A DNA stretch of 64,000 nucleotides from Haliotis rufescens (GCF_023055435.1 NW_025964024.1:1984001-2048000), one strand, 5' to 3'. Shown: positions 17,672 to 45,717, counted from the first letter of the stretch. Notes: generated from the letters alone by a model not told the origin. Numbers and translations are program-made.

Positions 17672-18334
17672 TCAGTGCATGGTTCTCTTGAGCTTGGCAC
17701 GTGCATTCTGGAACCACACTTGGGCCACTCTTCTGGGAAGACCCGCCTCTTCTGCGATCATCCCGAGGTCACTTCCGGTTGGGTTGGTGTCAAGGTCGAA
17801 GTACTTCTGGAAAACAGCTACCTGGTCCTCGTTGAAGGCTGTTCGGAATCTCTTGGATTTGGGTCGGCAGGTGACACTCTCGTCGTCGGGGTTGAGGACG
17901 TGGACTCGGCAAAGTACGCGGCTGTCGTGGATGGCGAAGTCTTCTCCTGTGGAAAGCTGTCTTTGACACATGCTGCATGAGAAACATGCAAGGTGGTACA
18001 TGTTCTCTCCAGCCGATCTGACCCAATCTCCGGACTCGATGTTACGTAGACAGGAACTACACTTGGTCTCTTGAACGCGGGCGAAGTCTCTCTGACAGAA
18101 TATGTTACCGTCCCTAACGAAGCAAGAAGAATGTCCACCAAGCGTCACCTGACACACACAGCAACGCAGACAGTGCTCGTGCCACACGTGATTCCCAGCA
18201 CGTAGATAGTACTGGTCAGTGATCACGTCACAACACGTGAAACACAAGGGGTCAGCGATGTTGAAACTGAGAGCGATGAAGTCTGCGGTCTCTTCCAAGT
18301 CTGAAGACAGGAGGTCATATGACATATCCGACAT
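17672..18334 (-). CDS. LIM-homeobox protein, Lhx6/8 (Arrowhead)-like, intronless, copy 1
   Basis: Two complete LIM zinc-finger domains (LIM2 DWVR...YHLACFSC..CQRQLSTGEDFA is Awh/Lhx6/8-like) and homeodomain SKRFRTAF...VWFQNARAK. TATA at 18430-18435; AATAAA at 17440-17445. Confidence 0.93.
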   Translation of the reverse strand: MSDMSYDLLSSDLEETADFIALSFNIADPLCFTCCDVITDQYYLRAGNHVWHEHCLRCCVCQVTLGGHSSCFVRDGNIFCQRDFARVQETKCSSCLRNIESGDWVRSAGENMYHLACFSCSMCQRQLSTGEDFAIHDSRVLCRVHVLNPDDESVTCRPKSKRFRTAFNEDQVAVFQKYFDLDTNPTGSDLGMIAEEAGLPRRVAQVWFQNARAKLKRTMH

Positions 18335-20142
18335 TGTAAAGGTATACAGGAGGAGCTAGAGGAAGACTTATGACGACGATAACGTGACGTGATGCTGAAA
18401 TGTATGATGGAAAATGATAAGCAGCCATTATTATATGCTAAGTTGACAGTTCAGAGTGAACGCGTATGCTTTGGTGACGCGTGATGACCGCTTTGACACG
18501 CTGTGACGTCAGAGCGCGTGACACAGCAACACTTGCTGAGTGATAAGTAATCACATTGTTTTCCTCTGATGGTTAATTGATCACTTGACGATGAAGTGAT
18601 TTTAAGCTTAGAACTTTCCAGGCTTGGAAGGTGCAGTCAGCCGTATCATAGCCAGCTAACAGTATGTTTACAGAAAGCCGTTTGTGAAAGAATTATCTCA
18701 TGATTGAAGTATTGACCTGATCTATCCCCAATGGCATCGATAAAACTCAACTGAATGAAAAGTATAGTATCATACACCCTGTCCTTACTGCAGTGAAGTC
18801 CCATACATTATGTATATACTACTCAAAAGAAGTTAAAGAACAACCTATTTTTGTATATTACTGCAGTAAAATTGTCATGGCATCACAGATTAAATATTGT
18901 TCATGAAATATAAAAAAATACCTCTTCATCGTTATCTTTATTCAGCATGTATATAGGCCATCGGCAACTGAGGTTACATGCACTTACGGTCTTTGAATAG
19001 CACATTAACACTATTGTTTCTTAATTGCATTGCATGCTACAAGCATTGTCAGATGTCTAAATTTCAACATACATCAGCATAATATATTTCTGTAAATAGT
19101 ATTTAGTGATTAGTATTTCTTGTGGAAATCTGCATAAACTTCACAAAGAAGCAAAATGTGGTACTAATTTTATCCATGGTTACAAACTTTACAAAACTTT
19201 GCAAAATCTTTCTTATCTTTTCTTATCTTGGTTTTGTTTTTATATTATATATAGTATTGATTGATTACAATGAGCATAATGATAGGTGGTTAATCTAATA
19301 GTTCCACATATAACTCAGATTGCCTGTATGTCTATTTACAATTTAGATATTGAAATTATATAATTTCCCCGACAGTACCACCTTACTGTCTGAAAAGCAC
19401 TTAAGTGACATGAACAAATGATAAAATAATATACAAAACAACTTTCTGTTAAGTATTTTGTGTATCCAGCCCAAACTACATGTATATTTATGGTAAACAT
19501 TGACATGTAAGTCTAATCATGTATATGATTACAGTGCAATTAGACCATTTATTCGTTCAATGTCACTATTTGCATAAGAAACATACCGTAAAGCAATACA
19601 GTATACCTAGACAAGGAGAAATAAACTACAATAATGGCATCGGCACAGAATCACGATTTTCTCAACAGATCCGTGATATGCCAAGACAAAAGACGCCAAC
19701 TCAATAAAACAGCTTTATTACAAATAAATAGCGACAAATTGTTTTATTGTTTTCTCACACAGAAATCTTCTTAAAATATTGTAGAAATTCAGTGGTAATA
19801 AAATGTTTTAGTTGAACACTTGTTATCACATCAATCAGCGGGTAATCAAGTTGTTATACACATATGACTTCTTGCAACGGGGCCTCTGTCAAGGCCTTGA
19901 TTGTCAATGATTGTTGATGTTTTCATGTTACAATGAAATGTGATCAGCTTGATTAGCCATCATCGGATTACGACACACGCTTATCACTGTGGTGTCAAAG
20001 CAAATGCCATCATGACGCTCTCGTTCACTCTGACGTGCCAACCTCACCATATTAACCGAGCAAGTGGACACGATGTTGTATTTTTCTTCTCTTGACTATT
20101 TCCACACAAGGCTTCCTCTAGTTCCTTCTACGCAGCTTTAGA

Positions 20143-20805
20143 ATGTCGGACATGTCATATGACCTCCTCTCCTCGGACTTGGAAGAGTCCGCAGACTTCA
20201 TCGCTCTTAGTTTCAACATCGCTGACCCCTTGTGTTTCACGTGTTGTGACGTCATCACTGACCAATACTATCTACGTGCTGGGGATCACGTGTGGCACGA
20301 GCACTGTCTGCGTTGCTGTGTGTGTCAGGTGACGCTTGGTGGACATTCTTCCTGCTTCGTCAAGGACGGAAACATATTCTGTCAGAGAGACTTCACCAAC
20401 ATTCACGAGACCAAGTGTAGCTCCTGTCTACGTCCCATCGAGTCCGGAGATTGGGTCAGATCGGCCGGAGAGAACATGTACCACCTTGCATGTTTCTCAT
20501 GCAGCATGTGTCAAAGACAACTCTCCACAGGAGAAGACTTCGCCATCCTAGACGACCGCGTACTTTGCCGAGTCCACGTCCTCAACCCCGACGACGAGAG
20601 TGTCACCTGTCGACCAAAGTCCAAGAGATTCCGAACAGCCTTCAACGAGGACCAGGTAGCTGTTTTACAGAAGTACTTCGACATTGACATCAACCCAACC
20701 GGAAGTGACCTCGGAATGATCGCAGAAGAGGCGGGTCTTCCCAGAAGAGTAGCCCAAGTGTGGTTCCAGAATGCACGAGCTAAACTCAAGAGAACCATGC
20801 ACTGA
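20143..20805 (+). CDS. LIM-homeobox protein, Lhx6/8-like, intronless, copy 2
   Basis: Intact 220-aa ORF, LIM-LIM-HD; AATAAA at 20926-20931. Confidence 0.93.
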   Translation: MSDMSYDLLSSDLEESADFIALSFNIADPLCFTCCDVITDQYYLRAGDHVWHEHCLRCCVCQVTLGGHSSCFVKDGNIFCQRDFTNIHETKCSSCLRPIESGDWVRSAGENMYHLACFSCSMCQRQLSTGEDFAILDDRVLCRVHVLNPDDESVTCRPKSKRFRTAFNEDQVAVLQKYFDIDINPTGSDLGMIAEEAGLPRRVAQVWFQNARAKLKRTMH

Positions 20806-21117
20806 ACTTTCAAGTCCCTGTTTCAACTAGTGCTCAATATGTGTCCTGACATGACTCCTGGTTATTTGTAATTATAGTAGAAGTCTGTCATATATATTTA
20901 TTTTATCCATTGCATTCTACATACAAATAAATGATAATGAAATAGCCATTTTGTTTATTTTATGGTATGTCGGTCATTCTTGGTTGCAGACTGTTTCCTG
21001 TTTACAGAGCCTGGGCGGATTAGTCTGATGTATAATCAGCCACAACTATTTATCTATTGTACATACAAAGATATAAATGATACATGAAATGTTCACTTCC
21101 TTCATGATCTGTCGATC

Positions 21118-21350
21118 TGACCTCGGGATGATCGCAGAAGAGGCGGGTCTTCCCAGAGGAATGGCCCAAGTGTGGTTCCAGAATGCGCGTGCTAAAGCTC
21201 AAGAGAACCATGCACTGAACTTTCGAGTCACTATGTTAGCTACTGCTTCATGTGTATGTTGTGATGAATCCCGGTTATTTGTATTCAATGTAGAAGTCAG
21301 CCACATCTAATTATCTATTGATTTTACATACATACAAATCAATGAAACAT
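21118..21350 (+). pseudogene. 3' fragment of the LIM-homeobox gene (homeobox helix 2-3 plus 3' UTR) with a frameshift
   Basis: DLGMIAEEAGLPRGMAQVWFQNARAK followed by a 1-nt insertion (GCTAAAGCTCAAG); the downstream sequence resembles the 3' UTR of copies 2-4. Confidence 0.85.
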
Positions 21351-23752
21351 GATGTATTCCCTTTTTTGTCCGTCTTACCTTGGTAGTTCCCGTGTGCACG
21401 TGATACTCACAAAATAACAAACCAGTTAACCTGTTAACCGCAATATATGATAATCAGGTTTTGTAGTTGCCTGTTGATGCATACAAATATATATGTTCTG
21501 CTCCAACATGTAGTCTTTGTAAATATTGAATGAAGCCGACAAACAACTATGTGTTGTCCCATTTAGTATCGACTCTGTGATCTGTCAGTAGATTTTTAAT
21601 TCTCTTTAAACATTAATGTACTTTGTATTTCACACGTCTGTGTGTCTTGTTTTTATGTCATACATATATTTATTGTTTATAAAAAATGTAATCCTGCTAA
21701 ATAGTCTTCGTCGTGTGGGAGTGAGACAGGTTTCACGCCGCTTTCAGCAATATTCCCGCAATATTACGACAGGGGTCACCAAAAATGGGCTCCGCGTGTC
21801 GTATTCGTGTGGGCAATCGACCCAGAGCCCTCGGTGAGTTTGACAATGTTTTTTGTTATTGTATAGGTCATTACCGTGTATCCTGTTTGTATGCCAATTT
21901 ATATTGCCTTTTAAATATAATTATTTAAAGTTATGGCAACTTTTCTTCCTCTTCACACAAATGCTCAGCTACGTCACAACCAACAACAGTACAACAGCAA
22001 CGTCAACGTTGCCACCCTCGTCATTCCAACGTTCTGTGTCATAAGAACGCGTTGTCTCCGTCACATTGGCGCCGAACAATGACATATTAAGATATGTCAT
22101 ATGTTATATTATTCATATTGATATACAATGAAATACAAGTGATTCTATGGCATTTGATTGGAAAAAGAAGCAACATTCTTAGTAAACATCCTTATTTGTT
22201 TATGTTTTCATGAACTGAAAAAGCATTAGTGCACGCCAACAAACGGACTATCGTTTCTTGATTGGTTATTAATAGAACAGGGGAGCTTGTGTTGCATTAT
22301 TGTTTTAGAACGAAGTCGCTGATTTCGCATTGTTGAGTTTGTTTGTGTTAATTATTAAATAAGCACTCTTGAAGTTAATTTCGGTGACATATTTACTTTA
22401 ATTTCTTTTTGTGTTGTTGATGGAGTTGGAGTGGATTGCAGTCTCCACCCAGCTTTGTACGTTTATACTTCACCACACGCAAAAATTGTGAAGTTCATTC
22501 TTGAATTAAGCAAAGATCGTGCCCCAACACTGTCATACACCAACATTGATAGGTGAAGCAAAACACTGTTACTGCACTTCAGAGGATTTAGTTCAAGGAT
22601 TTATTCCAGTCATGGTNNNNNNNNNNNNNNNNNNNNNNNNNNNNNNNNNNNNNNNNNNNNNNNNNNNNNNNNNNNNNNNNNNNNNNNNNNNNNNNNNNNN
22701 NNNNNNNNNNNNNNNNNNNNNNNNNNNNNNNNNNNNNNNNNNNNNNNNNNNNNNNNNNNNNNNNNNNNNNNNNNNNNNNNNNNNNNNNNNNNNNNNNNNN
22801 NNNNNNGCGGGATTAGTGTTGTGACAAGCTCATCACAATGATTAGCACTTACCTGGTTGCTGACATTGTTTTATCAAACGTTACAGCGCTTTCATCACAG
22901 TGAGCAATGACTATGTTTACGTTGAAGTTTTCGAATGGATGAACTTTATTCAGAAAAAGAGCGTCCACTTCACAAATATTATATGACATATTCACAGATG
23001 GATTGAATAATTAGCCTCCATTGATTTGATTATTTCTCTTTAAATGGGATTTATTAAATTCAGATTGAAATGGTGATAATTTCGTCGTTTCTCTCCCAAT
23101 TACATGTAGTTTTTTACAGGATGCATAGTTCTTGTTTTTAAATAAACAATAGGATCTATTTGTCACATTCTGGAACATAAGGTGAATGGCTTTGATATTA
23201 CAATTACCATAGACAGAAAATGAAATCACTTTGAGAACATGATTGTATTTCGTCTACAGCGTTCCGCGGGTTATCAACATATGTTCATCATTAACCTGTC
23301 AGAAAGCATTTAACAGTTATACTTACACAGTAGTCAGCTGAGGTTTAACTCGTGATCGCTGAAGTAACAGAAGATTAAACTCATCTTATCAAAATACCAA
23401 ATGATCATTATATGTTACTTTCAAATAAGGACATGATATTGTCTGTTAATTGATTGCTCTTCATTGGACTTGTCTGTTCAGTGATCTGTGATCACATTGT
23501 CTTAGTGACCAATCAGCACTAACAAAACAACAACATGTTCATCACGTGATTGTTACGGCGACACCTGCTAAATACGTCGCCGTCATCATGAGTACCTAGA
23601 CACGCGATTGCGCGTCATCATGACACTCTCGTTCACTCAAAGTTGCCAAGCCAACATATAAATCACAAGCTGTTTTGTGCCGTCGACATTCCATCTTTCA
23701 TCAAGTCACAACATTACAAGTCTTCCGCTAGCTCCTCTTGACTATCTCTGCA

Positions 23753-24415
23753 ATGTCGGACATGTCATATGACCTCCTCTCCTCGGAGTTGGAAGAGTCC
23801 GCAGACTTCATCGCTCTCAGTTTCAACATCGCTGACCCCTTGTGTTTCACGTGTTGTGACGTGATCACTGACCAGTACTATCTACGTGCTGGGGATCACG
23901 TGTGGCACGAACACTGTCTGCGTTGCTGTGTGTGTCAGGTGACGCTTGGTGGACATTCTTCTTGCTTCGTCAGGGACGGTAACATATTCTGTCAGAGAGA
24001 CTTCGCCAACATTCACGAGACCAAGTGTTGTTCTTGTCTACGTAACATCGAGTCCGGAGATTGGGTCAGATCGGCCGGAGAGAACATGTACCACCTTGCA
24101 TGTTTCTCATGCAGCATGTGTCAAAGACAGCTTTCCACAGGAGAAGACTTCGCCACCCTAGACGACCGCGTACTTTGCCGAGTCCACGTCCTCAACCCCG
24201 ACGACGAGAGTGTCACCTGTCGACCAAAGTCCAAGAGATTCCGAACAGCCTTCAACGAGGACCAGGTAGCTGTTTTACAGAAGTACTTCGACACTGACAC
24301 CAACCCAACCGGAAGTGACCTCGGAATGATCGCAGAAGAGGCGGGTCTTCCCAGAAGAGTAGCCCAAGTGTGGTTCCAGAATGCACGAGCTAAACTCAAG
24401 AGAGCCATGCACTGA
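23753..24415 (+). CDS. LIM-homeobox protein, Lhx6/8-like, intronless, copy 3
   Basis: The ATG equivalent to the other copies is at 23753 (the track start 23738 is TTG); intact 220 aa; TATAAAT at 23657. Confidence 0.93.
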   Translation: MSDMSYDLLSSELEESADFIALSFNIADPLCFTCCDVITDQYYLRAGDHVWHEHCLRCCVCQVTLGGHSSCFVRDGNIFCQRDFANIHETKCCSCLRNIESGDWVRSAGENMYHLACFSCSMCQRQLSTGEDFATLDDRVLCRVHVLNPDDESVTCRPKSKRFRTAFNEDQVAVLQKYFDTDTNPTGSDLGMIAEEAGLPRRVAQVWFQNARAKLKRAMH

Positions 24416-24727
24416 ACTTTCAAGTCCCTGTTTCAGCTAGTGCTCAATATGTATGCTGTGATGAATCCTGGTTATTTGTAATTATTGTAGAAGTCTGTCA
24501 TATATATTTATATTATTTATTGCATTCTACATACAAATAAATGATAATGAAATAGCCATTTTGTTTATTTTATGGTATGTCGGTCATTCTTGGTTGCAGA
24601 CTGTTCCCTGTTTACAGAGCCTGGGCGGATTAGTCTGATGGATAGTCAGCCACAACTATTTATCTATTGTACATACAAAGATATAAATGATACATGAAAT
24701 GTTCACTTCCTTCATGATCTGTCGATC

Positions 24728-24960
24728 TGACCTCGGGATGATCGTAGAAGAGGCGGGTCTTCCCAGAGGAGTGGCCCAAGTGTGGTTCCAGAATGCGCGT
24801 GCTAAAGCTCAAGAGAACCATGCACTGAACTTTCGAGTCACTATTTTAGCTACTGCTTCATGTGTATGTTGTGATGAATCCCGGTTATTTGTATTCACTG
24901 TAGAAGTCAGCCACATCTATTTATCTATTGATTTTACATACATACAAATCAATGAAACAT
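24728..24960 (+). pseudogene. 3' fragment of the LIM-homeobox gene, duplicate of 21118-21350
   Basis: Same fragment and frameshift in the second 3.6-kb unit. Confidence 0.85.
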
Positions 24961-27330
24961 GATGTATTCCCTTTTTTGTCCGTCTTACCTTGGTAGTTCC
25001 CGTGTGCACGTGATACTCACAAAATAACAAACCAGTTAACCTGTTAACCGCAATATATGATAATCAGGTTTTGTAGTTGTCTGTTGATGCATACAAATAT
25101 GTTCTGCTCCAACATGTAGTCTTTGTAAATATTGAATGAAGCCGACGAACAACTATGTGTTGTCCCATTTAGTATCGACTCTGTGATCTGTCAGTAGATT
25201 ATTAATTCTCTTTAAACATTAATGTACTTTGTATTTCACATGTCTGTGTGTTTTGTTTTTATGTCATACATATATTTATTGTTTATAAAAAATATAATCC
25301 TGCTAAATAGTCTTCGTCATGTGTGAGTGAGACAGGTTTCACGCCGCTTTCAGCAACATTCCCGCAATATTACGACAGGGGTCACCAAAAATGGGCTCCG
25401 CGTGTCGTATTCGTGTGGGCAATCGACCCAGAGCCCTCGGTGAGTTTGACAATGTTTTTTGTTGTATATGTCATTACCATGTATCATGTTTGTATGCCAA
25501 TTTATATTGCCTTTTAAATATAATTATATAAAGTTATGGCAACTTTTCTTCCTCTTCACACAAATGCTCAGCCACGTCACAACCAACAACAGTACAACAG
25601 CTACGGCAACGTTGCCACCCTCGTCATTCCAACGTTCTGTGTCATAAGAACGCGTTGTCTCCGCCACATTGGCGCCGAACAATGACATATTAAGATATGT
25701 CATATGTTATGATATTCATATTGATATACAATGAATTACAAATGATTCTATGGCATTTGATTGGAAAAAGAAGCAACATTCTTTAGTAAAAATTCTTATT
25801 TGTTTATGTTTTCATGACCTGAAAAAGCATTAGTGCACGCCAACTAACGGACTATCGTTTCTTGATTGGTTATTGATAGAACAGGGGAGCTTGTGTTGCA
25901 TTATTGTTGCAGAACGAAGTCGCTGATTTCTTATTGTTGAGTTTGTTTGTGTTAATTATTAAATAAGCACTCTTGAAGTTGCTTTCGGTGACATATTTAT
26001 TTGTAAGAATTTACTTTAATTTCTTTTTGTGTTGTTGATGGAGTTGGAGTGGATTGCAGTCTCCACCCAGCTTTGTACGTTTATACTTCACCACACGCAA
26101 AAATAGTGAAGTTCATTCTTGAATTAAGCAAAGATCGTGCCCCAACACTGTCATACACCAACATTGATAGGTGAAGCAAAACACTGTTACTGCACTTCAG
26201 AGGATTTAGTTCAAGGATTTATTCCAGTCATGGTGTACATCACACCCAATGTGGTGTGTGTGTGAGGGGAGAGGAAAGTGGAGGGAACGAGTGTATCACG
26301 AGGACGCGTGATTAGTGTTGTGACAAGCTCATCACAATGATAAGCAATTACCTGGTTGCTGACATTGTTTTATCAAACGTTACCGCGCTCTCATCACAGT
26401 GAGCAATGACTATGTTTACACGGGTGATTACAGGTCTCGCCCGACGTTTTAATCAAGGAAAAACGTTAGACATGCATAAGGAAAGAACGTTGAAGTTTTC
26501 GATTGGATGAACTTTATTCAGAAAAAGAGCGTCCACTTCACAAATATTATATGACATATTCACAGATGGATTGAATAGTTAGCCTCCATTGATTTGATTA
26601 TTTCTCTTTAAATGGGATTTATTAAAGTCAGATTGAAATGGTGATAATTTCGTCGTTTCTCTCCCAATTACATGTAGTTTTTTTACAGGATGCATAGTTC
26701 TTGTTTTTAAATAAACAATAGGATTTATTTGTCTCATTCTGGAACATAAGGTGAATGCCTTTTCTATTACAATTATCATAGACAGAAGATGAAATGACTT
26801 TGAGAACATGATTGTATTTCGTCTACAGCGTTCCGCGGGTTATCAACATATGTTCATCATTAATCTGTCAGAAAGCATTTAATAGTTATACTTACACAGT
26901 AGTCAGCTGAGGTTTAACTAGTGATCGCTGAAGTAACAGAAGATTAAACTCATCTTATCAAAATACCAAATGATCATTGTATGTTTCTTTCAAATAAGGA
27001 CATGATATTGTCTGTCAATTGATTGCTCTTCATTGGACTTGTCTGTTCAGTGAGCTGTGATCACATTGTCTTAGTGACCAATCAGCACTAACAAAACAAC
27101 AACATGTTCATCACGTGATTGTTACGGCGACACCTGCTAAATACGTCGCCGTCATCATGAGTACCTAGACACGCGATTGCGCGTCATCATGACACTCTCG
27201 TTCACTCAAAGTTGCCAAGCCAACGTATAAATCACAAGCTGTTTTGTGCCGTCGACATTCCATCTTTCATCATCTTCATCAAGTCACAACATCAAAAGTC
27301 TTCCTCTAGCTCCCCCTGTCCACCTTCACA

Positions 27331-27993
27331 ATGTCGGACATGTCATATGACCTCCTCTCCTCGGAGTTGGAAGAGTCCGCAGACTTCATCGCTCTTAGTT
27401 TCAACATAGCTGACCCCTTGTGTTTCGCGTGTTGTGAGGTCATCACTGACCAGTACTATCTACGTGCTGGGGATCACGTGTGGCACGAACACTGTCTGCG
27501 TTGCTGTGTGTGTCAGGTGACGCTTGGTGGACATTCTTCTTGCTTCGTCAAGGACGGTAACATATTCTGTCAGAGAGACTTCACCAACATTCACGAGACC
27601 AAGTGTTGTTCCTGTCTACGTAACATCGAGTCCGGAGATTGGGTCAGATCGGCTGGAGAGAACATGTACCACCTGGCATGTTTCTCATGCAGCATGTGTC
27701 AAAGACAGCTTTCCACAGGAGAAGACTTCGCCACCCTAGACGACCGCGTACTTTGCCGAGTCCACGTCCTCAACCCCGACGACGAGAGTGTCACCTGTCG
27801 ACCAAAGTCCAAGAGATTCCGAACAGCCTTCAACGAGGACCAGGTAGCTGTTTTACAGAAGTACTTCGACACTGACACCAACCCAACCGGAAGTGACCTC
27901 GGAATGATCGCAGAAGAGGCGGGTCTTCCCAGAAGAGTAGCCCAAGTGTGGTTCCAGAATGCACGAGCTAAACTCAAGAGAGCCATGCACTGA
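27331..27993 (+). CDS. LIM-homeobox protein, Lhx6/8-like, intronless, copy 4
   Basis: Intact 220-aa ORF; TATAAAT at 27226. Confidence 0.93.
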   Translation: MSDMSYDLLSSELEESADFIALSFNIADPLCFACCEVITDQYYLRAGDHVWHEHCLRCCVCQVTLGGHSSCFVKDGNIFCQRDFTNIHETKCCSCLRNIESGDWVRSAGENMYHLACFSCSMCQRQLSTGEDFATLDDRVLCRVHVLNPDDESVTCRPKSKRFRTAFNEDQVAVLQKYFDTDTNPTGSDLGMIAEEAGLPRRVAQVWFQNARAKLKRAMH

Positions 27994-28549
27994 ACTTTCA
28001 AGTCCCTGTTTCAGCTAGTGCTCAATATGTATGCTGTGATGAATCCTGGTTATTTGTAATTACTGTCATATATATTTATATTATTTATTGCATTCTACAT
28101 ACAAATAAATGATAATGAAATAGCCATTTTGTTTATTTTATGGTATGTCGGTCATTCTTGGTTGCAGACTGTTCCCTGTTTACAGAGCCTGGGCGGATTA
28201 GTCTGATGGATAGTCAGACACATCTATTAATCTCTTTTATCATACAAAACTGGCTCCCACAGGACATATCGCTTAGGTGAAATCAAGCTATATCTACATT
28301 GTAGATGTCACTGCAATGAAATTGCATCACAATGCTTTGCAGACCATTGTGATGTCATTGGGTACCAATACTTTCTGGTACTACATGTTATTAAATATAA
28401 GCGGCAAACCAATTTTCATAATTCAAAAAAATCCCTGTTAGAATATTTTCTGGTACCACACCTAGTCTTTGTGAATAATGAATAAATATAAACGAGCCTA
28501 TTGTACGATTGCGACTATGTAATGAGAATGTGTAAATGAATCACTATAT

Positions 28550-32086: not shown

Positions 32087-32749
32087 TTAGGGCATGGCTC
32101 TCTTGAGTTTAGCACGTGCATTCTGGAACCACACTTGGGCCACTCTTCTAGGAAGACCCGCCTCTTCTGCGATCATTCCGAGGTCATTTCCGGTTGGGTT
32201 GGTGTCAATGTCGAAGTACTTCTGTAAAACAGCTACCTGGTCCTCGTTGAAGGCTGTTCGGAATCTCTTCGACTTCGGTCGACAGGTGACATTCTCGTCG
32301 TCGGGGTTGAGGACGTGGACTCGGCAAAGTACGCGGTCGTCTAGGATGGCGAAGTCTTCTCCTGTGGAAAGCTGTCTTTGGCACATGCTGCACGAGAAAC
32401 ATGCCAGGTGGTACATGTTCTCTCCGGCCGATCTGACCCAATCTCCGGACTCGATGTTACGTAGACAGGAACCACACTTGGTCTTATGAACACGGGCGAA
32501 GTCTCTCTGACAGAATATGTTACCGTCCCTAACGAAGCAAGAAGAATGGCCATCAAGCGTCACCTGACACACACAGCAACGCAGACAGTGCTCGTGCCAC
32601 ACGTGTTCTCCAGCACGTAGATAGTACTGGTCAGTGATCACGTCACAACATGTGAAACACATGGGGTTAGCTATGTTGAAACTGAGGGCGATGAAGTCCC
32701 CAGACTCTTCCAAGTCCGAGGAGAGGAGGTCATATGACATATCCGACAT
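32087..32749 (-). CDS. LIM-homeobox protein, Lhx6/8-like, intronless, copy 5
   Basis: Intact 220-aa ORF; TATAAA on minus at 32827-32832. Confidence 0.93.
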   Translation of the reverse strand: MSDMSYDLLSSDLEESGDFIALSFNIANPMCFTCCDVITDQYYLRAGEHVWHEHCLRCCVCQVTLDGHSSCFVRDGNIFCQRDFARVHKTKCGSCLRNIESGDWVRSAGENMYHLACFSCSMCQRQLSTGEDFAILDDRVLCRVHVLNPDDENVTCRPKSKRFRTAFNEDQVAVLQKYFDIDTNPTGNDLGMIAEEAGLPRRVAQVWFQNARAKLKRAMP

Positions 32750-35101: not shown

Positions 35102-35764
35102 ATGTCGGACATGTCATATGACCTCCTCTCCTCGGACTTGGAAGAGTCCGGGGACTTCATCGCTCTCAGTTTCAACATAGCTGACCCCTTGTGTTTCGCG
35201 TGTTGTGAGGTCATCACTGACCAGTACTATCTACGTGCTGGGGATCACGTGTGGCACGAGCACTGTCTGCGTTGCTGTGTGTGTCAGGTGACGCTTGGTG
35301 GACATTCTTCTTGCTTCGTCAGGGACGGTAACATATTCTGTCAGAGAGACTTCGCCAACATTCACGAGACCAAGTGTAGTTCCTGTCTACGTAACATCGA
35401 GTCCGGAGATTGGGTCAGATCGGCCGGAGAGAACATGTACCACCTGGCATGTTTCTCATGCAGCATGTGTCAAAGACAGCTTTCCACAGGAGAAGACTTC
35501 GCCATCCACGACGGCCGCGTACTTTGCCGAGTCCACGTCCTCAACCCCGACGACGAGAGTATCACCTGCCGACCCAAATCCAAGAGATTCCGAACAGCCT
35601 TCAACGAGGACCAGGTAGCTGTTTTCCAGAAGTACTTCGACTTTGACACCAACCCAACCGGAAATGACCTCGGGATGATCGCAGAAGAGGCGGGTCTTCC
35701 CAGAAGAGTAGCCCAAGTGTGGTTCCAGAATGCACGAGCTAAACTCAAGAGAGCCTTGCACTGA
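35102..35764 (+). CDS. LIM-homeobox protein, Lhx6/8-like, intronless, copy 6
   Basis: Intact 220-aa ORF; TATAAAT at 34997; AATAAA at 36013. Confidence 0.93.
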   Translation: MSDMSYDLLSSDLEESGDFIALSFNIADPLCFACCEVITDQYYLRAGDHVWHEHCLRCCVCQVTLGGHSSCFVRDGNIFCQRDFANIHETKCSSCLRNIESGDWVRSAGENMYHLACFSCSMCQRQLSTGEDFAIHDGRVLCRVHVLNPDDESITCRPKSKRFRTAFNEDQVAVFQKYFDFDTNPTGNDLGMIAEEAGLPRRVAQVWFQNARAKLKRALH

Positions 35765-39100: not shown

Positions 39101-39613
39101 AGGCGACATTTTACACATCTTGCGAAAAGTATGAATTAAAGCACTAAACTGACTTAACGACAATCAGTGAGAGGATAGTCCCTGACATCTTAACCATATT
39201 TAATAGTGATTTAGGCGACATTTTACACTATCTTGCGAAAAGTATTAATTAAAGCACTAAACTGACTTAACGACAATCAGTGAAAGGATAGTCCCTGACA
39301 TCTTAACCATATTTAATAGTGATTTAGGCGACATTTTACACTATCTTGCGAAAAGTATTAATTAAAGCACTAAACTGACTTAACGACAATCAGTGATAGG
39401 ATAGTCCCTGACATCTTAACCATATTTAATAGTGATTTAGGCGACATTTTACACTATCTTGCGAAAAGTATTAATTAAAGCACTAAACTGACTTAACGAC
39501 AATCAGTGAAAGGATAGTCCCTGACATCTTAACCATATTTAATAGTGATTTAGGCGACATTTTACACCATCTTGCGATAAGTATTTATTAAAGCACTAAA
39601 CTGACTTAAGACA
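36118..39613. repeat. 113-bp satellite, ~31 monomers
   Basis: The monomer CAGTGAAAGGATAGTCCC...GACTTAACGACAAT starts at 36118, 36231, 36344 ... 39504. Confidence 0.98.
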
Positions 39614-40398
39614 AAAGTTCTCGCCCTGTTGGTATGCTTCGTACATTCCTTCTCTATGCAGGGGCGTCCCCGTTAAACTCAGAGAGTGAGCATGCGCAGT
39701 CTTTGCGGTGGCACCGGAGACAGCAAGAATATGAAGGTTTCAGTTTCTTGAACTTACAGTTCAAACGTCTGTACATTCTGCACCATCTTCGTGTTGGTAT
39801 GCCAAGTACGCTCGTTATATGCAGACTAAATACCCAACTCCTCTTGTAACGAAGTCGACATACGGAGCTGTAAATCCCAGAAGTTCTGTTTCGAATTTCG
39901 AATTCTGGAATTAAAACGGAATATATAGATCTTAGAATTTTGCTTTATCCCGAATTGACTGATCTACATTTGTCCTATTACAGAGCAACACAAATCTTTT
40001 GTTTATGTTAATTTGGGGGATGAAATAAACGCTGAAATAACTGTTCACTGAATATCCGGACAGAATTGTGTTTAGGGCCAAAATATATTGTTTTAACAAT
40101 TATTTTCTGATATCAGAAATATACAGTTTGACGTTGACACGTTTTCTGGAGATTCTATTCTTGAAATGACGTAAACAACGACGGACTACTTACACATTCC
40201 CGAGGAAAGCCCTTGGAATTCCCTATTACGAATAAATATTACGTTGTTCCTGATCATTTAGACTCTTTAAACTTGAATTTGACGTTTTAGCATACATTGT
40301 GATACGTCAGAGAGTTTGACTGAATGCCCTTTCACGAATATCCTCGTTTCGGCCCACTTTGTGAAAAGAATTAAGAAATGCACATTCAAACTATCGGC

Positions 40399-40562
40399 GG
40401 GCGGTCGGGTAGCCCAGTGGTTAAAGCGTTCGCTCGTCACGCCGAAGACCGGTTTCGATTCCTGACATGGGTACAATGTGTGAAGCCCATTCCTGGTGTC
40501 CCCCGCCGTGATATTGCTGGAACATTGCTAAAAGCGGCGTATAACCATACTCACTCACTCGC
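40399..40562 (+). mobile_element. SINE family A
   Basis: 13-bp TSD TCAAACTATCGGC at 40386-40398 and 40563-40575. Confidence 0.92.
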
Positions 40563-41022
40563 TCAAACTATCGGCTCTATCAGTGTCTAGACTGACAAGT
40601 GACAGTCTACAGAAATTAAATTTTTTTTTACCTCAGTATCCCTTTAACACATCTTTATAATCATTTTTCAATGATGACTATCACTTGCAATCGCCCACAT
40701 TTATGACCAACTTCGAAAAATCTCTCCCGTCACGTTTATCGTGTCGGCCATTTTGACTTCCTGTATTTGACATAACTGTATTACGACCTGCTGATTTGTT
40801 ATTACACTTGTACATACAACAAAATAAACTGTGCATTGAATCTTTTATTAACGTTTAATGTATATATACACATGAAATAAATTACACGTCCAACATTGGC
40901 TATGTACAATATAGTCACTGATGAAATAAATAATAACAATTCGTCCAAAATATACAAATTATCCATTCAGATTCCCTCCTTGAGACGAAGCACTTCAGGC
41001 TGCACCGGTTGTCTTCAAGAAG

Positions 41023-41184
41023 GAGTGAGTGAGTATGGTTTTACGCCGCTTTTAACAATCTTCCAGTAATATCACGGCGGGGGACACCAGAAATGGGCCT
41101 CACACATTGTGCCCATGTGGGAATCGAACCCGGGTCTTCAGCGTGACGAGCGAATGCTTTAACCGCTGGCTACCACACTGGCCC
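41023..41184 (-). mobile_element. SINE family A in the predicted 3' UTR of copy 7
   Basis: Family A sequence between the stop codon (41275) and AATAAA (40844-40849, minus). Confidence 0.88.
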
Positions 41185-41274
41185 TCAACAACAAGGACAA
41201 TTTATACAAATAGTATTATCTGCAATATCATAACTTATACACACGTATCAATACAAAGCACTGTAGAGTCAAGA

Positions 41275-41937
41275 TCACTGCATGGCTCGCTTGAGTTTAG
41301 CACGTGCATTCTGGAACCACACTTGGGCCACTCTTCTGGGAAGACCCGCCTCTTCTGCGATCATCCCGAGGTCATTTCCGGTGGGGTTGGTGTCAAAGTC
41401 GAAGTACTTCTGTAAAACAGCTACCTGGTCTTCGTTGAAGGCTGTTCGGAATCTCTTGGATTTGGGTCGGCAGGTGACATTCTCGTCGTCGGGGTTGAGG
41501 ACGTGGACTCGGCAAAGTACGCGGCCGTCGTGGATGGCGAAGTCTTCTCCTGTGGAAAGCTGTCTTTGACACATGCTGCACGAGAAACATGCCAGGTGGT
41601 ACATGTTCTCTCCGGCCGATCTGACCCAATCTCCGGACTCGATGTTACGTAGACAGGAACTACACTTGGTCTCTTGAACGCGGGCGAAGTCTCTCTGGCA
41701 GAATATGTTTCCGCCCCTAACGAAGCAAGAAGAATGTCCACCAAGCGTCACCTGACACACACAGCAACGCAGACAGTGCTCGTGCCACACGTGATCCCCA
41801 GCACGTAGATAGAACTGGTCAGTGATGACCTCACAACACGCGAAACACAAGGGGTCAGCTATGTTGAAACTGAGAGCGATGAAGTCCCCAGACTCTTCCA
41901 ACTCCGAGGAGAGGAGGTCATATGACATGTCCGACAT
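41275..41937 (-). CDS. LIM-homeobox protein, Lhx6/8-like, intronless, copy 7
   Basis: Intact 220-aa ORF; TATAAATA on minus at 42022-42029. Confidence 0.93.
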   Translation of the reverse strand: MSDMSYDLLSSELEESGDFIALSFNIADPLCFACCEVITDQFYLRAGDHVWHEHCLRCCVCQVTLGGHSSCFVRGGNIFCQRDFARVQETKCSSCLRNIESGDWVRSAGENMYHLACFSCSMCQRQLSTGEDFAIHDGRVLCRVHVLNPDDENVTCRPKSKRFRTAFNEDQVAVLQKYFDFDTNPTGNDLGMIAEEAGLPRRVAQVWFQNARAKLKRAMQ

Positions 41938-43270
41938 TGTGAAGGTGGACAGGAGAAGCTAGAGGAATTTTTTGTGGAGATCTGATTAAGGAAAGAATGA
42001 TGATTTCAGCAGACAACGGTCTATTTATACGCTAGGCCTGGCATCTTAGAGTGAACAAGAGTGTCATGATGACGCGAGATCAGTGTTTATACACGCTATG
42101 ACGTCAGGGTGATCCTCCGGGCCTTCATCACTTAATAATCATTTAATCATTGATACTTAGCGTTGCATTGTTTCCATGTCCTTGATGAGCTCGCTCACCA
42201 TGGTAGTTAACGATGCTTGAAGTATCACACAGACAACAAATATATGATTTCATCAAAATAATTCTCAAAATACACACTGACAGCGGCCATATTACATACA
42301 ATAGATAACATGTATTTGCCAGATGTAAACTAAAATATTACTCTGACAAGGTATTATGATGAACATATTTCAAGAGAACTTGTTTCAAATTAATTGACAC
42401 TGTTCCAAATATGTTTATTAGACAGTCATTGTATTACTGTACATACTGCACGCTACACATTTACGTCATACACCTCTGCCAAACAGTCAAACAAATCAAG
42501 TTGTTTGATGAAGGGATAAACCGATATAAACTAACGTGTTGCGTTTATTCCCTACATTATTCGCTACATTAAATGATTGGGCTCAGTTTGGCTCGGTCCA
42601 TGGTGAATTTTCAGTTCAGTTTTCAGAGTATCTCATATAAATTTTCATTATTTTAGACTCCTTCTATTATCATATTTGAAAAGCCATGTGGTGCTTTGAG
42701 GTCAAACAACTTATGAATCGCTCCCAAATCTATTAATAAAATATAAAAGTATTCGGTTCGAAGCAGATTGGCATATTTAACGCTCATTTAATCACGTGCA
42801 TTTTCAGTGTAAGCTGTTTTGTCTTTTTAAAACAATAACATCATCTCAGATACAGTCTGAATTGAACACGAGTTTTGTTTATTTTCCCACTTTTTTTCCT
42901 GAGATAGAACATAGAGAAACAACTAAAAAAATGCACTCAGTTGTCCTTCAGGTGAGATAGTTCAACAGTTATACCTTCCTCATTGGTTCATAAGGGGCCG
43001 GTCGTTTGATATTCTGTAGGGGCATGTGTTTGAAAAAGAAAAACAATAGCCTTATGTTTTCCACACATATAAACCATGCTGGATGTCCTTACAAGTGTTT
43101 GGCTCCTTGTGTCAGAGATATGTCTTGTATGGCCTGAAGTGCGGATTAATAAATATTCTGTCTCAAACAAGTACACGAAGCCACCTGGACTACTTAAGGT
43201 CGGACCGTTAGGCACATATGAGAATGTATTTGCTCATCTCATGTTGTGTTTTAATTGTAAACATGTAAAA

Positions 43271-43436
43271 GGGGCGGTCGGGGAGCCCAGTGGTTAAAGC
43301 GTTCGCTCGTCACGCCGAAGACCGGTTTCGATTCCCGACATGGGTACAATGTGTGAAGCCCATTCCTGGTGTCCCCCGACGTGATATTACTGGAAACTTG
43401 CTAAAAGCGGCATAAAATCAAACTCAATCACTCACT
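43271..43436 (+). mobile_element. SINE family A
   Basis: Family A sequence with an imperfect TSD, AAA(C/G)ATGTAAAA. Confidence 0.88.
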
Positions 43437-43959
43437 AAAGATGTAAAAGATGAAGCACATGCTTTGCTGCCATGCCCATTATATAGATGAATTATGGCCA
43501 CCCATGTAAATGTATGCTTTAAAGCATGAGCAAGTTTTTATTCGTTAACTGATAGTTAAATGTGTCCTTGATATTATTACCCTGGCTTGACCTCTTATGG
43601 TCCCAGAATCTTCTTAAGTATTTTAGAACACGGGCGCGATGTGTCATTTAAATAGACATGTATCATATTGTATCATATATAGTCTTGCATACACCGCCAA
43701 GTGACTGGTCTTAAATGTATGTATACTTTTAGTATGTACACTCTAAAAAAACAAATTTGATTTTTTTTTTGGTAACATTTGACACAAGAGCCATCAAATT
43801 ATGTTGTTCCGTGTATTTATGCATGATATAAACAAACACAGTAATGTCATTTTGTTACACAGTCATCATTCGTTGTCATGGGAGTAAATATTTTTTGTAA
43901 CAATCGTTTTCTGGCCCTTCACGTTAATGTTGAGTGTGAGTTACATTGTGTGTTAGAAT

Positions 43960-44470
43960 ACATGTTTTAAACATATTCATTTTCACAAAAATGTGAACAT
44001 GGATTGGTAAACAAGCGTAACGCTTATGTTAATACCGCTCCATTACACAGAAGGTTAGATGTAACAAATCAATTGTACATGCCAAGCTAGATGTGTGTAT
44101 ATATAATAAATATATTTGCAGTTTATATTAAACAATTCATTTAATTGAAAATCTGCCAGTTTTTAATATGAAGTTTTGAATAGAATCTAATGTTTGGATT
44201 TGCTCTTCCTTAATCAAATGCGAATTTCCGCACAGCACTGTTTGTAAAGAATAACCATGTTGGTAAAAATACATTTCGAGGAACATAGTAATTTGTACGC
44301 ACAAAAAAGAAGTGTAAAGCATCTTCGGTATGATATCCACAGGAACAAGTTTTTTTTGTATCAAAAATATATCTATCATACTGATCTGTGTTAAGATCGC
44401 TGCAGCCAAGCCTGAGGCGACTGTGAATAATTTGACATAATCTTTTTCCATAATTTAAATCCAAGTGTAT
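43960..44470 (-). mobile_element. CR1/L2-like LINE 3' fragment
   Basis: RLCQIIHSRLRLGCSDLN...CSCGYHTEDALHFFF is typical of the ORF2 C-terminus of invertebrate CR1-group LINEs; frameshifted. Confidence 0.7.
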
Positions 44471-44621
44471 AGCACTGAATACATGATAAAGTTTTTATTT
44501 ATTTGTATGTAATATTTAAGAGTGCGGCTATAATAAACCCTTCTGTTTGTCTAAGTGAATGAATAGTAGGCATTAAGAAACAATTGACTCGGAGTACTGC
44601 ACTAATTGATCAATCTGTTGG

Positions 44622-44946
44622 ACCGTAACTGTAGATATGACTCGTAAATACATCTCAAGCCTTAATCAGTCAATGATTGAACTACTGATAGAGTCAATCA
44701 AACCGCCGCGATGTGGTTCGTGACGGCGCGTGTCAACATGGCTGACACTGCCGTCACGCCCGAAGTCGTTCACTCAGTATGATGCACCGTAACTGGGAAT
44801 ATGACGCGTAAATACATCTCAAGCCTCAATCAGTCAGTGATTGAATATTGATGGAATCAGTCAATCCGCGGCGAGATTGTACGTGACGGCGCGTGTCACC
44901 ATGGCTGACAGTGCCGTCACTCCCGAAGTCATTCACTCAGTCTGAT
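44622..44946 (+). promoter_or_regulatory. Tandemly duplicated ~164-bp proximal promoter of copy 8
   Basis: Units start at 44622 and 44786 (ACCGTAACTG...TAAATACATCTCAAGC) and each ends in RTTCACTCAGT; TATATAA at 44958. Confidence 0.7.
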
Positions 44947-45045
44947 ATGCGTAGAAGTATATAACGTCATGGACGCACCGTCAGTCATCCTCATCCTCTC
45001 TCGTCACCTGAACAGCATCTACATCTGTAACGTCGTTCGTCCGCC

Positions 45046-45717
45046 ATGTCCCACTCGTCGTATATGTCCTCTTCAGCGTCGGATCTCGAGGATGAGATAC
45101 ATTCCTATCTCACCAGTCTCAGCCCGGACCCTCATATGCCCATCTGTTTCACGTGCTGTGACGTCATCACTGATCAGTACTATCTACGCGCTGGGGAACA
45201 TGTGTGGCACGAGCACTGTCTGCGTTGCTGTATGTGTCAGGTGACGCTTGGCGGACATTATTCTTGCTTCGTTAGGGACGGTAACATATTCTGCCAGAGA
45301 GACTTCGCCCACGTTCACGAGATCAAGTGTAGCTCCTGTCTACGTCCCATCGAGTCCGGAGATTGGGTCAGATCGGCCGGAGAGAACATGTACCACCTTG
45401 CATGTTTCTCATGCAGCGCGTGCCAAAGACAACTGTCCACAGGAGAGGACTTCGCCATCCACGACGACCGCATACTATGCCGAGTCCACGTCCTCAACCC
45501 CCACGACGACAACGTCACCTGTCAACCAAAGTCTAAGAGATTCCGAACAGCCTTCAACGAGGACCAGCTCGCCACTCTTCAGCGCCACTTCGAGATGGAC
45601 CCCAACCCAAATAGCCTTCACCTTGACCAGGTCGCCATGGACGCAGGTCTGACGAAGAAGGTGACAAAAGTCTGGTTCCAAAATGCACGTGCAAAACTGA
45701 GGAAGTTAAAGCACTAA
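45046..45717 (+). CDS. LIM-homeobox protein, Lhx6/8-like, intronless, divergent copy 8
   Basis: 223-aa ORF. LIM domains almost identical to copies 1-7; N-terminus and homeodomain helices 1-2 differ. AATAAA at 46085. Confidence 0.93.
   Translation: MSHSSYMSSSASDLEDEIHSYLTSLSPDPHMPICFTCCDVITDQYYLRAGEHVWHEHCLRCCMCQVTLGGHYSCFVRDGNIFCQRDFAHVHEIKCSSCLRPIESGDWVRSAGENMYHLACFSCSACQRQLSTGEDFAIHDDRILCRVHVLNPHDDNVTCQPKSKRFRTAFNEDQLATLQRHFEMDPNPNSLHLDQVAMDAGLTKKVTKVWFQNARAKLRKLKH

What the first reader, a model, noticed from the sequence alone, without database searches (positions are those of the whole stretch)
17672..45717. Cluster of eight intact, intronless Lhx6/8 (Arrowhead)-type LIM-homeobox genes
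Seen: eight uninterrupted LIM-LIM-homeodomain ORFs in 28 kb, all with their zinc ligands, WFQN and a TATA-like box, none with a stop or frameshift. Known: invertebrate LIM-HD families (Lhx1/5, 2/9, 3/4, 6/8, Islet, Lmx) are normally one or a few multi-exon genes each. Inference: a retrocopy of Lhx6/8 was amplified locally and kept functional. This would be a lineage-specific, high-dosage, rapidly transcribable TF array, comparable in layout to multicopy homeobox arrays such as the Dux retrogene arrays. This is the best candidate for an undescribed system in the window.
Basis: partly seen in the sequence, partly recalled or inferred. Interest (0 to 1): 0.92.

Follow-up and report, generated by a model that had tools for sequence, protein, structure and literature searches.

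The report
Abalone array of intronless Awh-derived LIM-homeobox genes
An abalone genome carries eight intact, intron-free copies of a LIM-homeobox regulator gene side by side; they derive from the normal multi-exon Arrowhead/Lhx6/8 gene, occur in at least four abalone species, and are an undescribed expansion of a normally single-copy gene class.

Summary
Eight uninterrupted ORFs of 220-223 aa lie in 28 kb. Each has two LIM domains with all 16 zinc ligands, a WFQN homeodomain and a TATA-like box 83-105 bp upstream of the ATG. The N gap (22617-22806) is intergenic, but it sits inside a 3.6-kb tandem unit, so eight is a lower bound.

The genes fall in the Lhx6/8/Arrowhead clade. The canonical Awh gene, with five coding exons, lies on another contig, and all three of its introns within the shared region are absent here. 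This supports origin from a retrocopy.

The array is not recent or species-specific. Equivalent genes are annotated "Awh-like" in Haliotis rubra, H. asinina and H. cracherodii, and a ninth intronless paralog lies 190 kb away. Copies are under purifying selection (dN/dS 0.17-0.45). Their coding regions are far more alike than their promoters, which indicates gene conversion. Copy 8 is a mosaic with only its LIM region homogenised.

Contigs from runs only guessed to be RNA, from related organisms, cover the coding regions but not unique spacer. Stage, tissue and function are unknown, and the Dux-like "high-dosage, rapid transcription" reading is untested. I found no paper describing the array.

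An earlier scan note on this same window (s1-806708, copy 8 chimeric) is confirmed.

The parts
17672..18334 (-). copy 1, intronless LIM-LIM-HD gene, 220 aa
   Evidence: ORF; Pfam LIM x2 + Homeodomain; TATA-like TATAAT at 18430-18435
20143..20805 (+). copy 2, 220 aa; head-to-head with copy 1; first unit of the 3.6-kb tandem
   Evidence: the H. cracherodii protein P0134 is its sister in the tree, 100/89*; AATAAA 121 bp after the stop
21113..21218 (+). relic: 3' end of a homeobox (aa ~187-220) with a 1-bp frameshift, followed by 3'UTR-like sequence
   Evidence: 3'UTR repeat at +414..560
22617..22806 (.). assembly gap (N), intergenic, at a breakpoint of the tandem unit; not filled
   Evidence: aligned blocks 20106-22616 / 23716-26234 and 22919-24679 / 26487-28248
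23753..24415 (+). copy 3, 220 aa
   Evidence: 95.8% nt identity to the copy 2 unit, flanks included
24723..24815 (+). second relic of the homeobox 3' end
27331..27993 (+). copy 4, 220 aa; youngest pair with copy 3 (dS 0.044)
32087..32749 (-). copy 5, 220 aa
   Evidence: sister of H. cracherodii P0131, 100/97*
35102..35764 (+). copy 6, 220 aa; head-to-head with copy 5
41275..41937 (-). copy 7, 220 aa
   Evidence: contigs of runs guessed RNA cover 41167-42001
45046..45717 (+). copy 8, 223 aa, divergent type with one ortholog in each of four species; head-to-head with copy 7
   Evidence: contigs of runs guessed RNA cover 45045-45783
45140..45570 (+). tract of copy 8 (LIM1, LIM2, linker, start of HD) homogenised with copies 1-7: mostly 87-96% nt identity (mean ~91%), against 44-64% at the 5' end and 51-73% at the 3' end
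20106..28248 (+). regular head-to-tail tandem of ~3.6-kb units carrying copies 2, 3 and 4 (94-96% nt)
44622..44946 (+). 163-bp x2 duplication upstream of copy 8 that repeats its upstream CRE-like element

Best explanation
This is a family of small intronless transcription-factor genes found across the abalone genus and derived from Arrowhead/Lhx6/8. Inferred history: a spliced Awh mRNA was reverse-transcribed and inserted away from the parental locus. The copy gained a compact TATA promoter with CRE-like half-sites. It then multiplied by DNA-level tandem and inverted duplication that carried about 170 bp of promoter along. Shown here: the eight copies are intact and under purifying selection. 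Their coding regions are kept far more alike than their flanks, which points to gene conversion. In the divergent copy 8 the conversion covers only the LIM region, so the family has two homeodomain types with one common LIM type. Inferred mechanism: each gene encodes a minimal LIM1-LIM2-homeodomain protein with an acidic N-terminus, a short linker and no C-terminal tail. The protein binds TAAT-type sites through a Q50 homeodomain and recruits the Ldb/Chip cofactor through its LIM domains, adding to or competing with canonical LIM-HD complexes. The copies appear to be transcribed. Gonad or early-embryo expression is my favoured guess but is not shown.
For: Identity: Pfam LIM x2 + HD in all eight copies. 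All of the best 120 database hits are Awh/Lhx8. In the ML tree the whole family sits inside the Lhx6/8/Awh clade, 100/100* against Lmx1 and Lhx3/4. Retro-origin: canonical Awh (P0005, 100% match in its last two exons) has five coding exons at G000:C594, with introns after aa ~33, 94, ~164 and 260. The first three fall inside the region that is continuous in every copy. N-terminal homology to exon 1 is retained. The parent lies on a different contig. Promoter carried by DNA duplication: TATA and upstream motifs align in all copies. Selection: dN/dS 0.17-0.45; Fisher p from 5e-7 to 0.016 for independent pairs. Age and breadth: proteins of both types are annotated in H. rubra, H. asinina and H. 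cracherodii, with consecutive accession numbers. The copy 8 type has one ortholog per species and follows a species-like order. Conversion: upstream -1..-170 is 64-73% identical against 91-95% in the CDS, with dS 0.04-0.22. Among 595 pairs of informative sites, 333 fail the four-gamete test. For copy 8, dS is 0.22 in the LIM region against ~1.0 in the HD and >1.4 in the N-terminus. Lineage-specific LIM residues are shared between the two types within species groups. Transcription: contigs of small runs guessed to be RNA, from related organisms, cover the c7 and c8 coding regions at 95-98% identity and leave unique spacer uncovered. An 'Awh-like' gene is among the top genes up-regulated in maturing H. 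laevigata ovary. Cofactor: the model of LIM1-2 with this genome's own Ldb LID gave weak support only.
Against: No poly(A) remnant or target-site duplication is visible, so retroposition rests on intron absence and location alone. The tree places the family next to long-branched bivalve Awh rather than abalone Awh, with a long-branch warning, so the time of origin is open. The PHI test for recombination is not significant (p 0.17). The runs are only guessed to be RNA, are contigs and come from other organisms, so neither transcription in this species nor which copy is expressed is shown. The preprint does not say which 'Awh-like' gene it detected; it could be the canonical one. Only Lmx1 and Lhx3/4 served as outgroups; Lhx1/5, Lhx2/9 and Islet were not in the tree. 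DNA binding, Ldb binding and any biological role are untested.
Confidence: 0.75

Rival explanations
1. Birth-and-death without conversion. Each abalone lineage expanded its own copies recently and independently from one or two ancestral intronless genes, and the similarity of coding regions reflects youth rather than homogenisation.
For: Copies of this genome and H. cracherodii form their own clade of 10, 100/99*, apart from H. rubra and H. asinina copies. c2-c3-c4 is a young tandem whose flanks (95-96% identity) agree with dS 0.04-0.075. The PHI test is not significant.
Against: For c1, c5, c6 and c7 the flanks are unalignable beyond about -170 and only 64-73% identical within it, while dS is 0.08-0.19. 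More than half of informative site pairs are incompatible with any single tree. Copy 8 has clean 1:1 orthologs in four species, yet its LIM region tracks the multi-copy genes of its own lineage.
Confidence: 0.15
2. The proteins act mainly as competitors rather than activators. Lacking the region after the homeodomain, they would titrate Ldb/Chip, and the DNA sites of canonical Awh and other LIM-HD factors, in the way LMO/Beadex proteins titrate Ldb.
For: The proteins end 3 aa after the homeodomain, whereas canonical Awh continues for ~45 aa, and the LIM2-HD linker is shortened. All zinc ligands are conserved, and the LIM region is the part kept uniform across both types. The LIM-LID model gave weak support.
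Against: The acidic N-terminus inherited from Awh exon 1 is retained and could activate. The homeodomain is under purifying selection too (mean dN 0.028), which a pure cofactor sponge would not need. No functional data exist.
Confidence: 0.3
3. The copies did not arise from a retrocopy. They are an old DNA-level paralog of Awh that lost its introns, or an ancient intronless paralog predating abalones.
For: No poly(A) tail or target-site duplications are seen. The tree puts the family outside the abalone + Gigantopelta Awh clade. Two ENA proteins of unknown organism (70% identity) branch inside the family.
Against: Three introns are missing at once and precisely, with the exon-1 N-terminus retained. 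This is the signature of a processed mRNA, and stepwise intron loss is rarer. No protein between 52% and 70% identity was found in 5.8 billion sequences outside Haliotis and those two ENA entries. A tree with the family as sister of abalone Awh is not rejected (AU p 0.139).
Confidence: 0.1
4. The array is an assembly artefact, or a set of dead retro-pseudogenes that merely happen to be open.
For: An assembly gap lies inside the tandem part. Two truncated relics show that decay does occur.
Against: The eight copies differ by 4-9% in nucleotides and have unique flanks. Individual copies have sisters in the independent H. cracherodii assembly. Eight of eight ORFs are open with dN/dS well below 1. 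About seven multi-copy proteins per species are annotated in three other species.
Confidence: 0.03

Closest known systems
Arrowhead (Awh) / Lhx6 / Lhx8 LIM-homeodomain transcription factors
   Same: Same domain order (LIM1-LIM2-HD) with all zinc ligands. The homeodomain has V47, Q50, N51 and A54. The N-terminus is homologous to Awh exon 1. The family lies in the Lhx6/8 clade in the tree, and its best hits are exclusively Awh/Lhx8.
   Different: Only ~50% identical to this genome's own Awh. Intronless. Truncated right after the homeodomain, with a shorter LIM2-HD linker. WFQNARAK replaces WFQNSRAR. There are eight or nine copies instead of one. They are paralogs, not the ortholog, which sits on contig C594.
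Dux / DUX4 retrogene arrays of placental mammals (PMC3004920, PMC13558733)
   Same: Intronless homeobox ORFs thought to derive from an intron-containing parent by retroposition and then amplified in tandem. Part of this array (c2-c4) is a regular 3.6-kb head-to-tail repeat.
   Different: LIM class rather than PRD-like double homeobox. Eight copies, not tens to hundreds. Irregular spacing with three head-to-head pairs. Each copy has its own diverged flanks. Expression at genome activation is not shown.
Lineage-specific tandem homeobox expansions, from my own knowledge unless cited: Obox/Rhox in rodents, Shx in Lepidoptera, spiralian TALE (SPILE) genes (PMC8524836), novel oyster PRD/TALE genes
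   Same: Clustered, fast-evolving, taxon-restricted duplicates of a conserved developmental regulator.
   Different: Those arose by DNA duplication of intron-bearing genes in the ANTP, PRD or TALE classes. To my knowledge and in the searches done here, no LIM-class expansion of this kind has been reported.
LMO / Beadex LIM-only proteins
   Same: Small proteins built around two LIM domains that bind the Ldb/Chip LID. This is a possible functional analogy if the copies act as competitors.
   Different: LMO proteins have no homeodomain. Here the homeodomain is intact and under selection.

Membership tests
LIM-homeodomain (LIM class) transcription factors | Two tandem LIM zinc fingers, each with eight zinc ligands | tested here: met
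   Pfam LIM x2 in all eight copies; 16 ligand positions invariant
LIM-homeodomain (LIM class) transcription factors | A complete 60-aa homeodomain C-terminal to the LIM pair | tested here: met
   Pfam Homeodomain positions 1-57 of 57, E 2e-14 to 2e-16; WFQN and R53 invariant
Lhx6/8 / Arrowhead group | Groups with Lhx6, Lhx8 and Awh to the exclusion of other LIM-HD groups in a phylogeny | tested here: met
   100/100* against Lmx1 and Lhx3/4. In this genome each domain's best non-array match is the canonical Awh exon. Lhx1/5, Lhx2/9 and Islet were not in the tree.
Lhx6/8 / Arrowhead group | Being the ortholog of Awh (single-copy, multi-exon locus) | tested here: not met
   The ortholog is G000:C594:4253148-4260848, with five coding exons and 100% identity to P0005 in exons 4-5. 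The array genes are derived paralogs.
Retrogene (processed retrocopy) | All parental introns within the copied region are absent | tested here: met
   Parental introns after aa ~33, 94 and ~164; continuous ORFs in all copies
Retrogene (processed retrocopy) | An intron-bearing parent is retained at another locus | tested here: met
   Parent on contig C594, array on C246
Retrogene (processed retrocopy) | Poly(A) tract remnant and flanking target-site duplication | tested here: not met
   No A-rich tract or direct repeat at the homology ends. This is expected to be erased in an old, re-duplicated copy, so it weakens the inference but does not exclude it.
Dux-like macrosatellite homeobox array | Uniform head-to-tail repeat unit, each with one intronless homeobox ORF | tested here: not met
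   Only c2-c4 share a 3.6-kb unit. The other copies have unrelated spacers and mixed orientation.
Dux-like macrosatellite homeobox array | Burst of expression at zygotic genome activation | not testable with these tools
   Only coded contig runs of unknown tissue were available
Concertedly evolving gene family | Paralogs within a lineage are more alike than orthologs between lineages, with conversion tracts ending at defined borders | tested here: met
   Tested on proteins only for the other species, because their DNA could not be fetched.

The most novel reading that the evidence does not exclude
The array is a germline or early-embryo regulator system peculiar to abalones. It would consist of a dosage-amplified pair of LIM-HD types (seven or more 'multi' copies plus one copy-8 type) that share one gene-conversion-maintained LIM interface for Ldb/Chip but carry two different homeodomains. 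It would be switched on from compact TATA/CRE promoters during oocyte maturation or at zygotic genome activation. That would make it a spiralian, LIM-class counterpart of the mammalian Dux/Obox systems.
Probability: 0.2. Interest if true: 0.75.

Novelty: new member of a known kind. Interest (0 to 1): 0.55.

Why it matters
LIM-homeobox genes are among the most conservative developmental regulators. Outside whole-genome duplications each of the six groups is usually one gene per genome. An eight-to-nine-gene intronless expansion, retained across the abalone species sampled and homogenised only in its cofactor-binding half, is a natural experiment. It shows how a retrocopy can acquire a promoter, multiply and split into DNA-binding variants while keeping a common protein interface. 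If the genes prove to act in oocytes or at genome activation, they would extend to molluscs, and to a new homeobox class, the pattern in which young tandem homeobox arrays take over the earliest developmental steps. Abalones are also farmed, so a gonad-maturation regulator would have practical interest.

Tried and rejected
All cross-species comparison is on proteins, and only 11 of the 20 named members of the main cluster could be listed.

The PHI test gave no significant distance dependence of incompatibility (p 0.17). I rely instead on the four-gamete count, on the flank versus coding contrast and on the copy 8 mosaic.

The upstream region of the ninth paralog shows no homology to the array promoters, so a shared acquired promoter is not supported.

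No poly(A) tail or target-site duplication was found.

The AU test could not decide whether the family is sister to abalone Awh (p 0.139).

Seven literature searches found no description of the array. The Haliotis iris genome paper treats only Hox/ParaHox genes.

Runs with a record as RNA for this stretch were not available. Only 'guessed RNA' contig runs of coded organisms could be laid, so start sites, strand, level and tissue cannot be given.

Scan notes by words returned nothing.


Full report
WHAT IS THERE. Seven are 220 aa and copy 8 is 223 aa. Their order and orientation is c1(-) c2(+) c3(+) c4(+) c5(-) c6(+) c7(-) c8(+), so c1/c2, c5/c6 and c7/c8 are head-to-head pairs. Pfam finds two LIM domains and a full homeodomain in each. 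In the alignment all 16 zinc-ligand positions, WFQN and R53 are invariant. Copies 1-7 are 92-96% identical in protein and copy 8 is 73% identical to them. Every copy has a TATA-like hexamer 83-105 bp upstream of its ATG, with CGTCA/TGACG half-sites 30-50 bp further up; c1 and c7 have the full palindrome TGACGTCA. Most copies have AATAAA 110-370 bp after the stop.

THE GAP. The window has three N runs. The run inside the finding, 22617-22806, lies 1.8 kb after the stop of c2 and 0.95 kb before the ATG of c3. It interrupts no gene. The 101-aa 'ORF' 22519-22824 is an artefact of reading through N. The gap does sit at a breakpoint between aligned blocks of the c2-c3-c4 tandem (20106-22616 matches 23716-26234; 22919-24679 matches 26487-28248; 94-96% identity). 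The gap length is only estimated, so further 3.6-kb units could be hidden, and eight copies is a lower bound.

WHOSE GENOME, AND IS THE FAMILY KNOWN. The window is G000:C246:1984001-2048000 of a 1.33-Gb assembly. The closest proteins are 'LIM/homeobox protein Awh-like' of Haliotis rubra (90%), H. asinina (83%) and H. cracherodii (75% for the copy 8 type). The window's own proteins are already in NCBI and UniRef, with names withheld by the tool. The canonical Awh protein P0005 is labelled H. rufescens / H. cracherodii. Its last two exons match this genome at 100%. By elimination the genome is probably red abalone, but this is an inference.

The 90% cluster of the multi-copy type has 27 members: 7 from the window and 20 named. 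The copy 8 type has exactly one member in each of the four species. Accession numbers run consecutively within each species (XP_046554330-337, XP_067674901-911, XP_071114906-915), which suggests clustering there too. Automatic annotation therefore knows the genes. Seven full-text searches found no paper describing the expansion. The only mention is an 'Awh-like' gene among the top 50 genes up-regulated in maturing ovary of H. laevigata, and which gene is meant is not stated.

WHICH LIM-HD GROUP. All of the best 120 of 488 hits are Awh, Lhx8 or LHX6_8 proteins. I built an IQ-TREE (LG+C20) of 53 proteins. The rows were the window copies, the other Haliotis copies, Awh of 15 animals, Lhx6, Lhx8 and, as outgroups, Lmx1 and Lhx3/4 taken. 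The tree puts the whole family inside the Lhx6/8/Awh clade with 100/100* support. However, within this genome the best non-array match of each domain is the canonical Awh exon (58%, 51% and 51%, against at most 47% for other LIM-HD loci).

RETROCOPY ORIGIN. The canonical Awh lies on another contig. tblastn of P0005 on L043 gives five coding exons, with introns after about aa 33, 94, 164 and 260, spanning 7.7 kb. I mapped it exon by exon and did not build a joined model. The first three introns fall within the region homologous to the array genes, which is continuous in all eight. The array proteins even keep the exon-1 N-terminus: MSDMSY..DLEES compared with MSDMSVD..DYEDD. They stop three residues after the homeodomain and have a shorter LIM2-HD linker.

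Loss of three introns at once, a retained parent and a different location are the classical marks of a processed retrocopy. A poly(A) remnant and target-site duplications are not visible, which is unsurprising for an old and re-duplicated locus but leaves the inference indirect.

A ninth intronless LIM-LIM-HD gene (259 aa) lies 190 kb away on the same contig. It has a 97% ortholog in H. rubra. In the tree it joins the array genes (98/93*, with a long-branch warning). It shares WFQNARAK and a K-x-TM[HY] end with them. The family branches among long-branched bivalve Awh rather than next to abalone Awh, but the AU test does not reject the latter placement (p 0.139). The date of origin is therefore open. 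Two ENA proteins of unknown organism (70% identity) branch inside the family.

HOW IT GREW AND HOW IT IS KEPT. High nucleotide identity between copies (91-95%) is confined to the coding region plus about 40 bp of 5' leader. Further upstream, to about -170, the copies still align, including the TATA box and upstream motifs, but at only 64-73% identity. Beyond that nothing aligns apart from shared repeats. The promoter was therefore duplicated along with the gene. This means DNA-level duplication rather than repeated retroposition. The duplications are also much older than the coding similarity suggests, because dS among c1-c7 is only 0.04-0.22.

Three further observations point to gene conversion. 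(i) Of 595 pairs among 35 informative sites, 333 fail the four-gamete test, so the site pattern is a mosaic; the PHI test itself is not significant (p 0.17). (ii) Copies of this genome and H. cracherodii form their own clade (100/99*) apart from H. rubra and H. asinina copies, although individual window copies have H. cracherodii sisters (c5 with P0131, c2 with P0134). (iii) Copy 8 has clean 1:1 orthologs in four species, yet its dS to the other copies is 0.22 across the LIM region, about 1.0 in the linker plus homeodomain and above 1.4 in the N-terminus. Its homogenised tract runs from about 45140 to 45570. Lineage-specific LIM residues are shared between the two gene types within species groups.

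By contrast c2-c3-c4 is a genuinely young tandem whose flanks and dS agree. Two 3' relics show that partial copies decay; the one after c2 is seen to carry a 1-bp frameshift. Selection is purifying throughout. Pairwise dN/dS is 0.17-0.45, and one-sided Fisher tests give 5e-7, 1e-5 and 0.016 for three independent pairs, 0.008 for the youngest pair and 5e-9 for c1 against c8.

TRANSCRIPTION. No run on record as RNA holds the stretch. I laid four small contig runs that are guessed to be RNA, from organisms coded A, B and C, on 41000-46000. In X1, contigs cover the c7 gene (41167-42001) and the c8 gene (45045-45771) at about 95% identity. In X2 a 532-nt contig covers 45279-45783 at 98%. X4 behaves like X1. 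Most of the unique spacer has no cover (42336-43170, 43505-43838 and 44507-45007, apart from a trace in one bin of X4), while high-copy repeats have enormous depth.

This pattern fits transcriptomes of related abalones that contain mRNAs of both gene types. It is not proof. The kind of library is a guess, contigs show neither ends nor strand, and the organisms are not this one.

LIKELY MECHANISM (inferred). The proteins are minimal LIM-HD factors. The homeodomain keeps V47, Q50, N51 and A54 as in Awh, so TAAT-type binding is expected from general knowledge of Q50 homeodomains. LIM pairs of LIM-HD proteins bind the LID of Ldb/Chip.

I modelled residues 28-150 of copy 2 with four zinc ions and the LID encoded in this genome (L044:1501-1623, found with PF17916). 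The verdict was weak support. The median score was 0.38 (runs 0.38, 0.63, 0.38) and the best control was 0.14. The mark was reached by 51 of 78 solved complexes and 2 of 108 mismatched pairs. At 0.60 or under, however, it was reached by only 5 of those 78 solved complexes and by all 4 mismatches that passed. The runs agree in at least 44% of their contacts, and the partner's pLDDT is at least 57. LIM-LID complexes of relatives are solved, so the pass may be from memory.

Whether the proteins activate through the retained acidic N-terminus or compete with other LIM-HD factors (they have no C-terminal tail) is open. The uniform LIM type combined with two homeodomain types suggests one cofactor interface and two DNA-binding flavours. 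I favour gonad or early-embryo expression, for three reasons: the ovary result for an 'Awh-like' gene; the known oocyte role of vertebrate Lhx8 (own knowledge); and the general habit of young tandem homeobox arrays. This is a guess.

VERDICT. The finding is real and biologically coherent. Its core reading, an Lhx6/8 retrocopy that was amplified and kept, is supported. Three corrections apply. The array is old and shared across the Haliotis species sampled. It evolves in concert. It is not a Dux-like macrosatellite. The genes are already predicted in public annotation, but I could not find the array described in the literature. I class it as a new member of the known kind 'lineage-specific tandem homeobox expansion, retrogene-derived'. 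To my knowledge it is the first in the LIM class.

Noticed in passing
G000:C246:1811527-1812303 (-), = L009:1198-1977; outside the window, 190 kb upstream: A ninth intronless LIM-LIM-HD gene of 259 aa. It is ~40% identical to the array copies and ~51% to canonical Awh, and has a 97% ortholog in H. rubra (P0140). Its promoter is unrelated to those of the array.
   Followed up: partly
window 21113-21218 and 24723-24815 (+): Two truncated relics of the homeobox 3' end plus 3'UTR, ~310 bp downstream of copies 2 and 3. The first has a 1-bp frameshift.
   Followed up: yes
window 36117-39614: A 113-bp satellite, 31 copies, 97% matches, filling most of the spacer between copies 6 and 7.
   Followed up: no
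window 3039-3734 (-): A single-exon bHLH ORF of 231 aa (Pfam HLH, E 1e-14). Its nearest ESM Atlas clusters are named 'oligodendrocyte transcription factor 2-like' (Olig family). It lies 14 kb from the array.
   Followed up: partly
window 41000-41166, 43171-43504, 45676-46000: Very high-copy repeats (summed contig depth 1e3-1e5 in all four runs). The loose ends contain a tRNA-like B-box (GGTTCGATTCCC), so these are probably tRNA-derived SINEs. Related copies lie downstream of c5, c7 and c8.
   Followed up: no
window 51332-51403 (-): A tRNA-Asp (GTC) gene, found by ARAGORN and by Rfam (61 bits).
   Followed up: no
window 12118-12289 and 13311-13482: Two further N runs of 172 letters each, next to long impure CA/AC microsatellites (12312-12686 and 14087-14562). 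They explain the strong GC and AT skew at 12-16 kb.
   Followed up: no
window 6867-7769 (-): A 300-aa ORF without a Pfam family. Its nearest ESM Atlas clusters are large sets of mollusc 'hypothetical proteins' (320 members), so it is possibly a repeat-borne ORF.
   Followed up: partly
G000:C594 (4.25, 4.84, 6.89, 6.90, 18.1, 25.8, 39.4 Mb): Most other LIM-HD loci of this genome, all split into exons, lie on the same contig as canonical Awh. One is only 0.6 Mb from it. This may reflect the ancient Lhx2/9-Lhx6/8 linkage (own knowledge, not tested).
   Followed up: no
window 43839-44506: Low-depth contigs of runs X1, X2 and X4 also cover part of the c7-c8 spacer, around a 104-aa ORF (44137-44451, -) that has no Pfam hit. 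This may be an unannotated transcript or a repeat.
   Followed up: no
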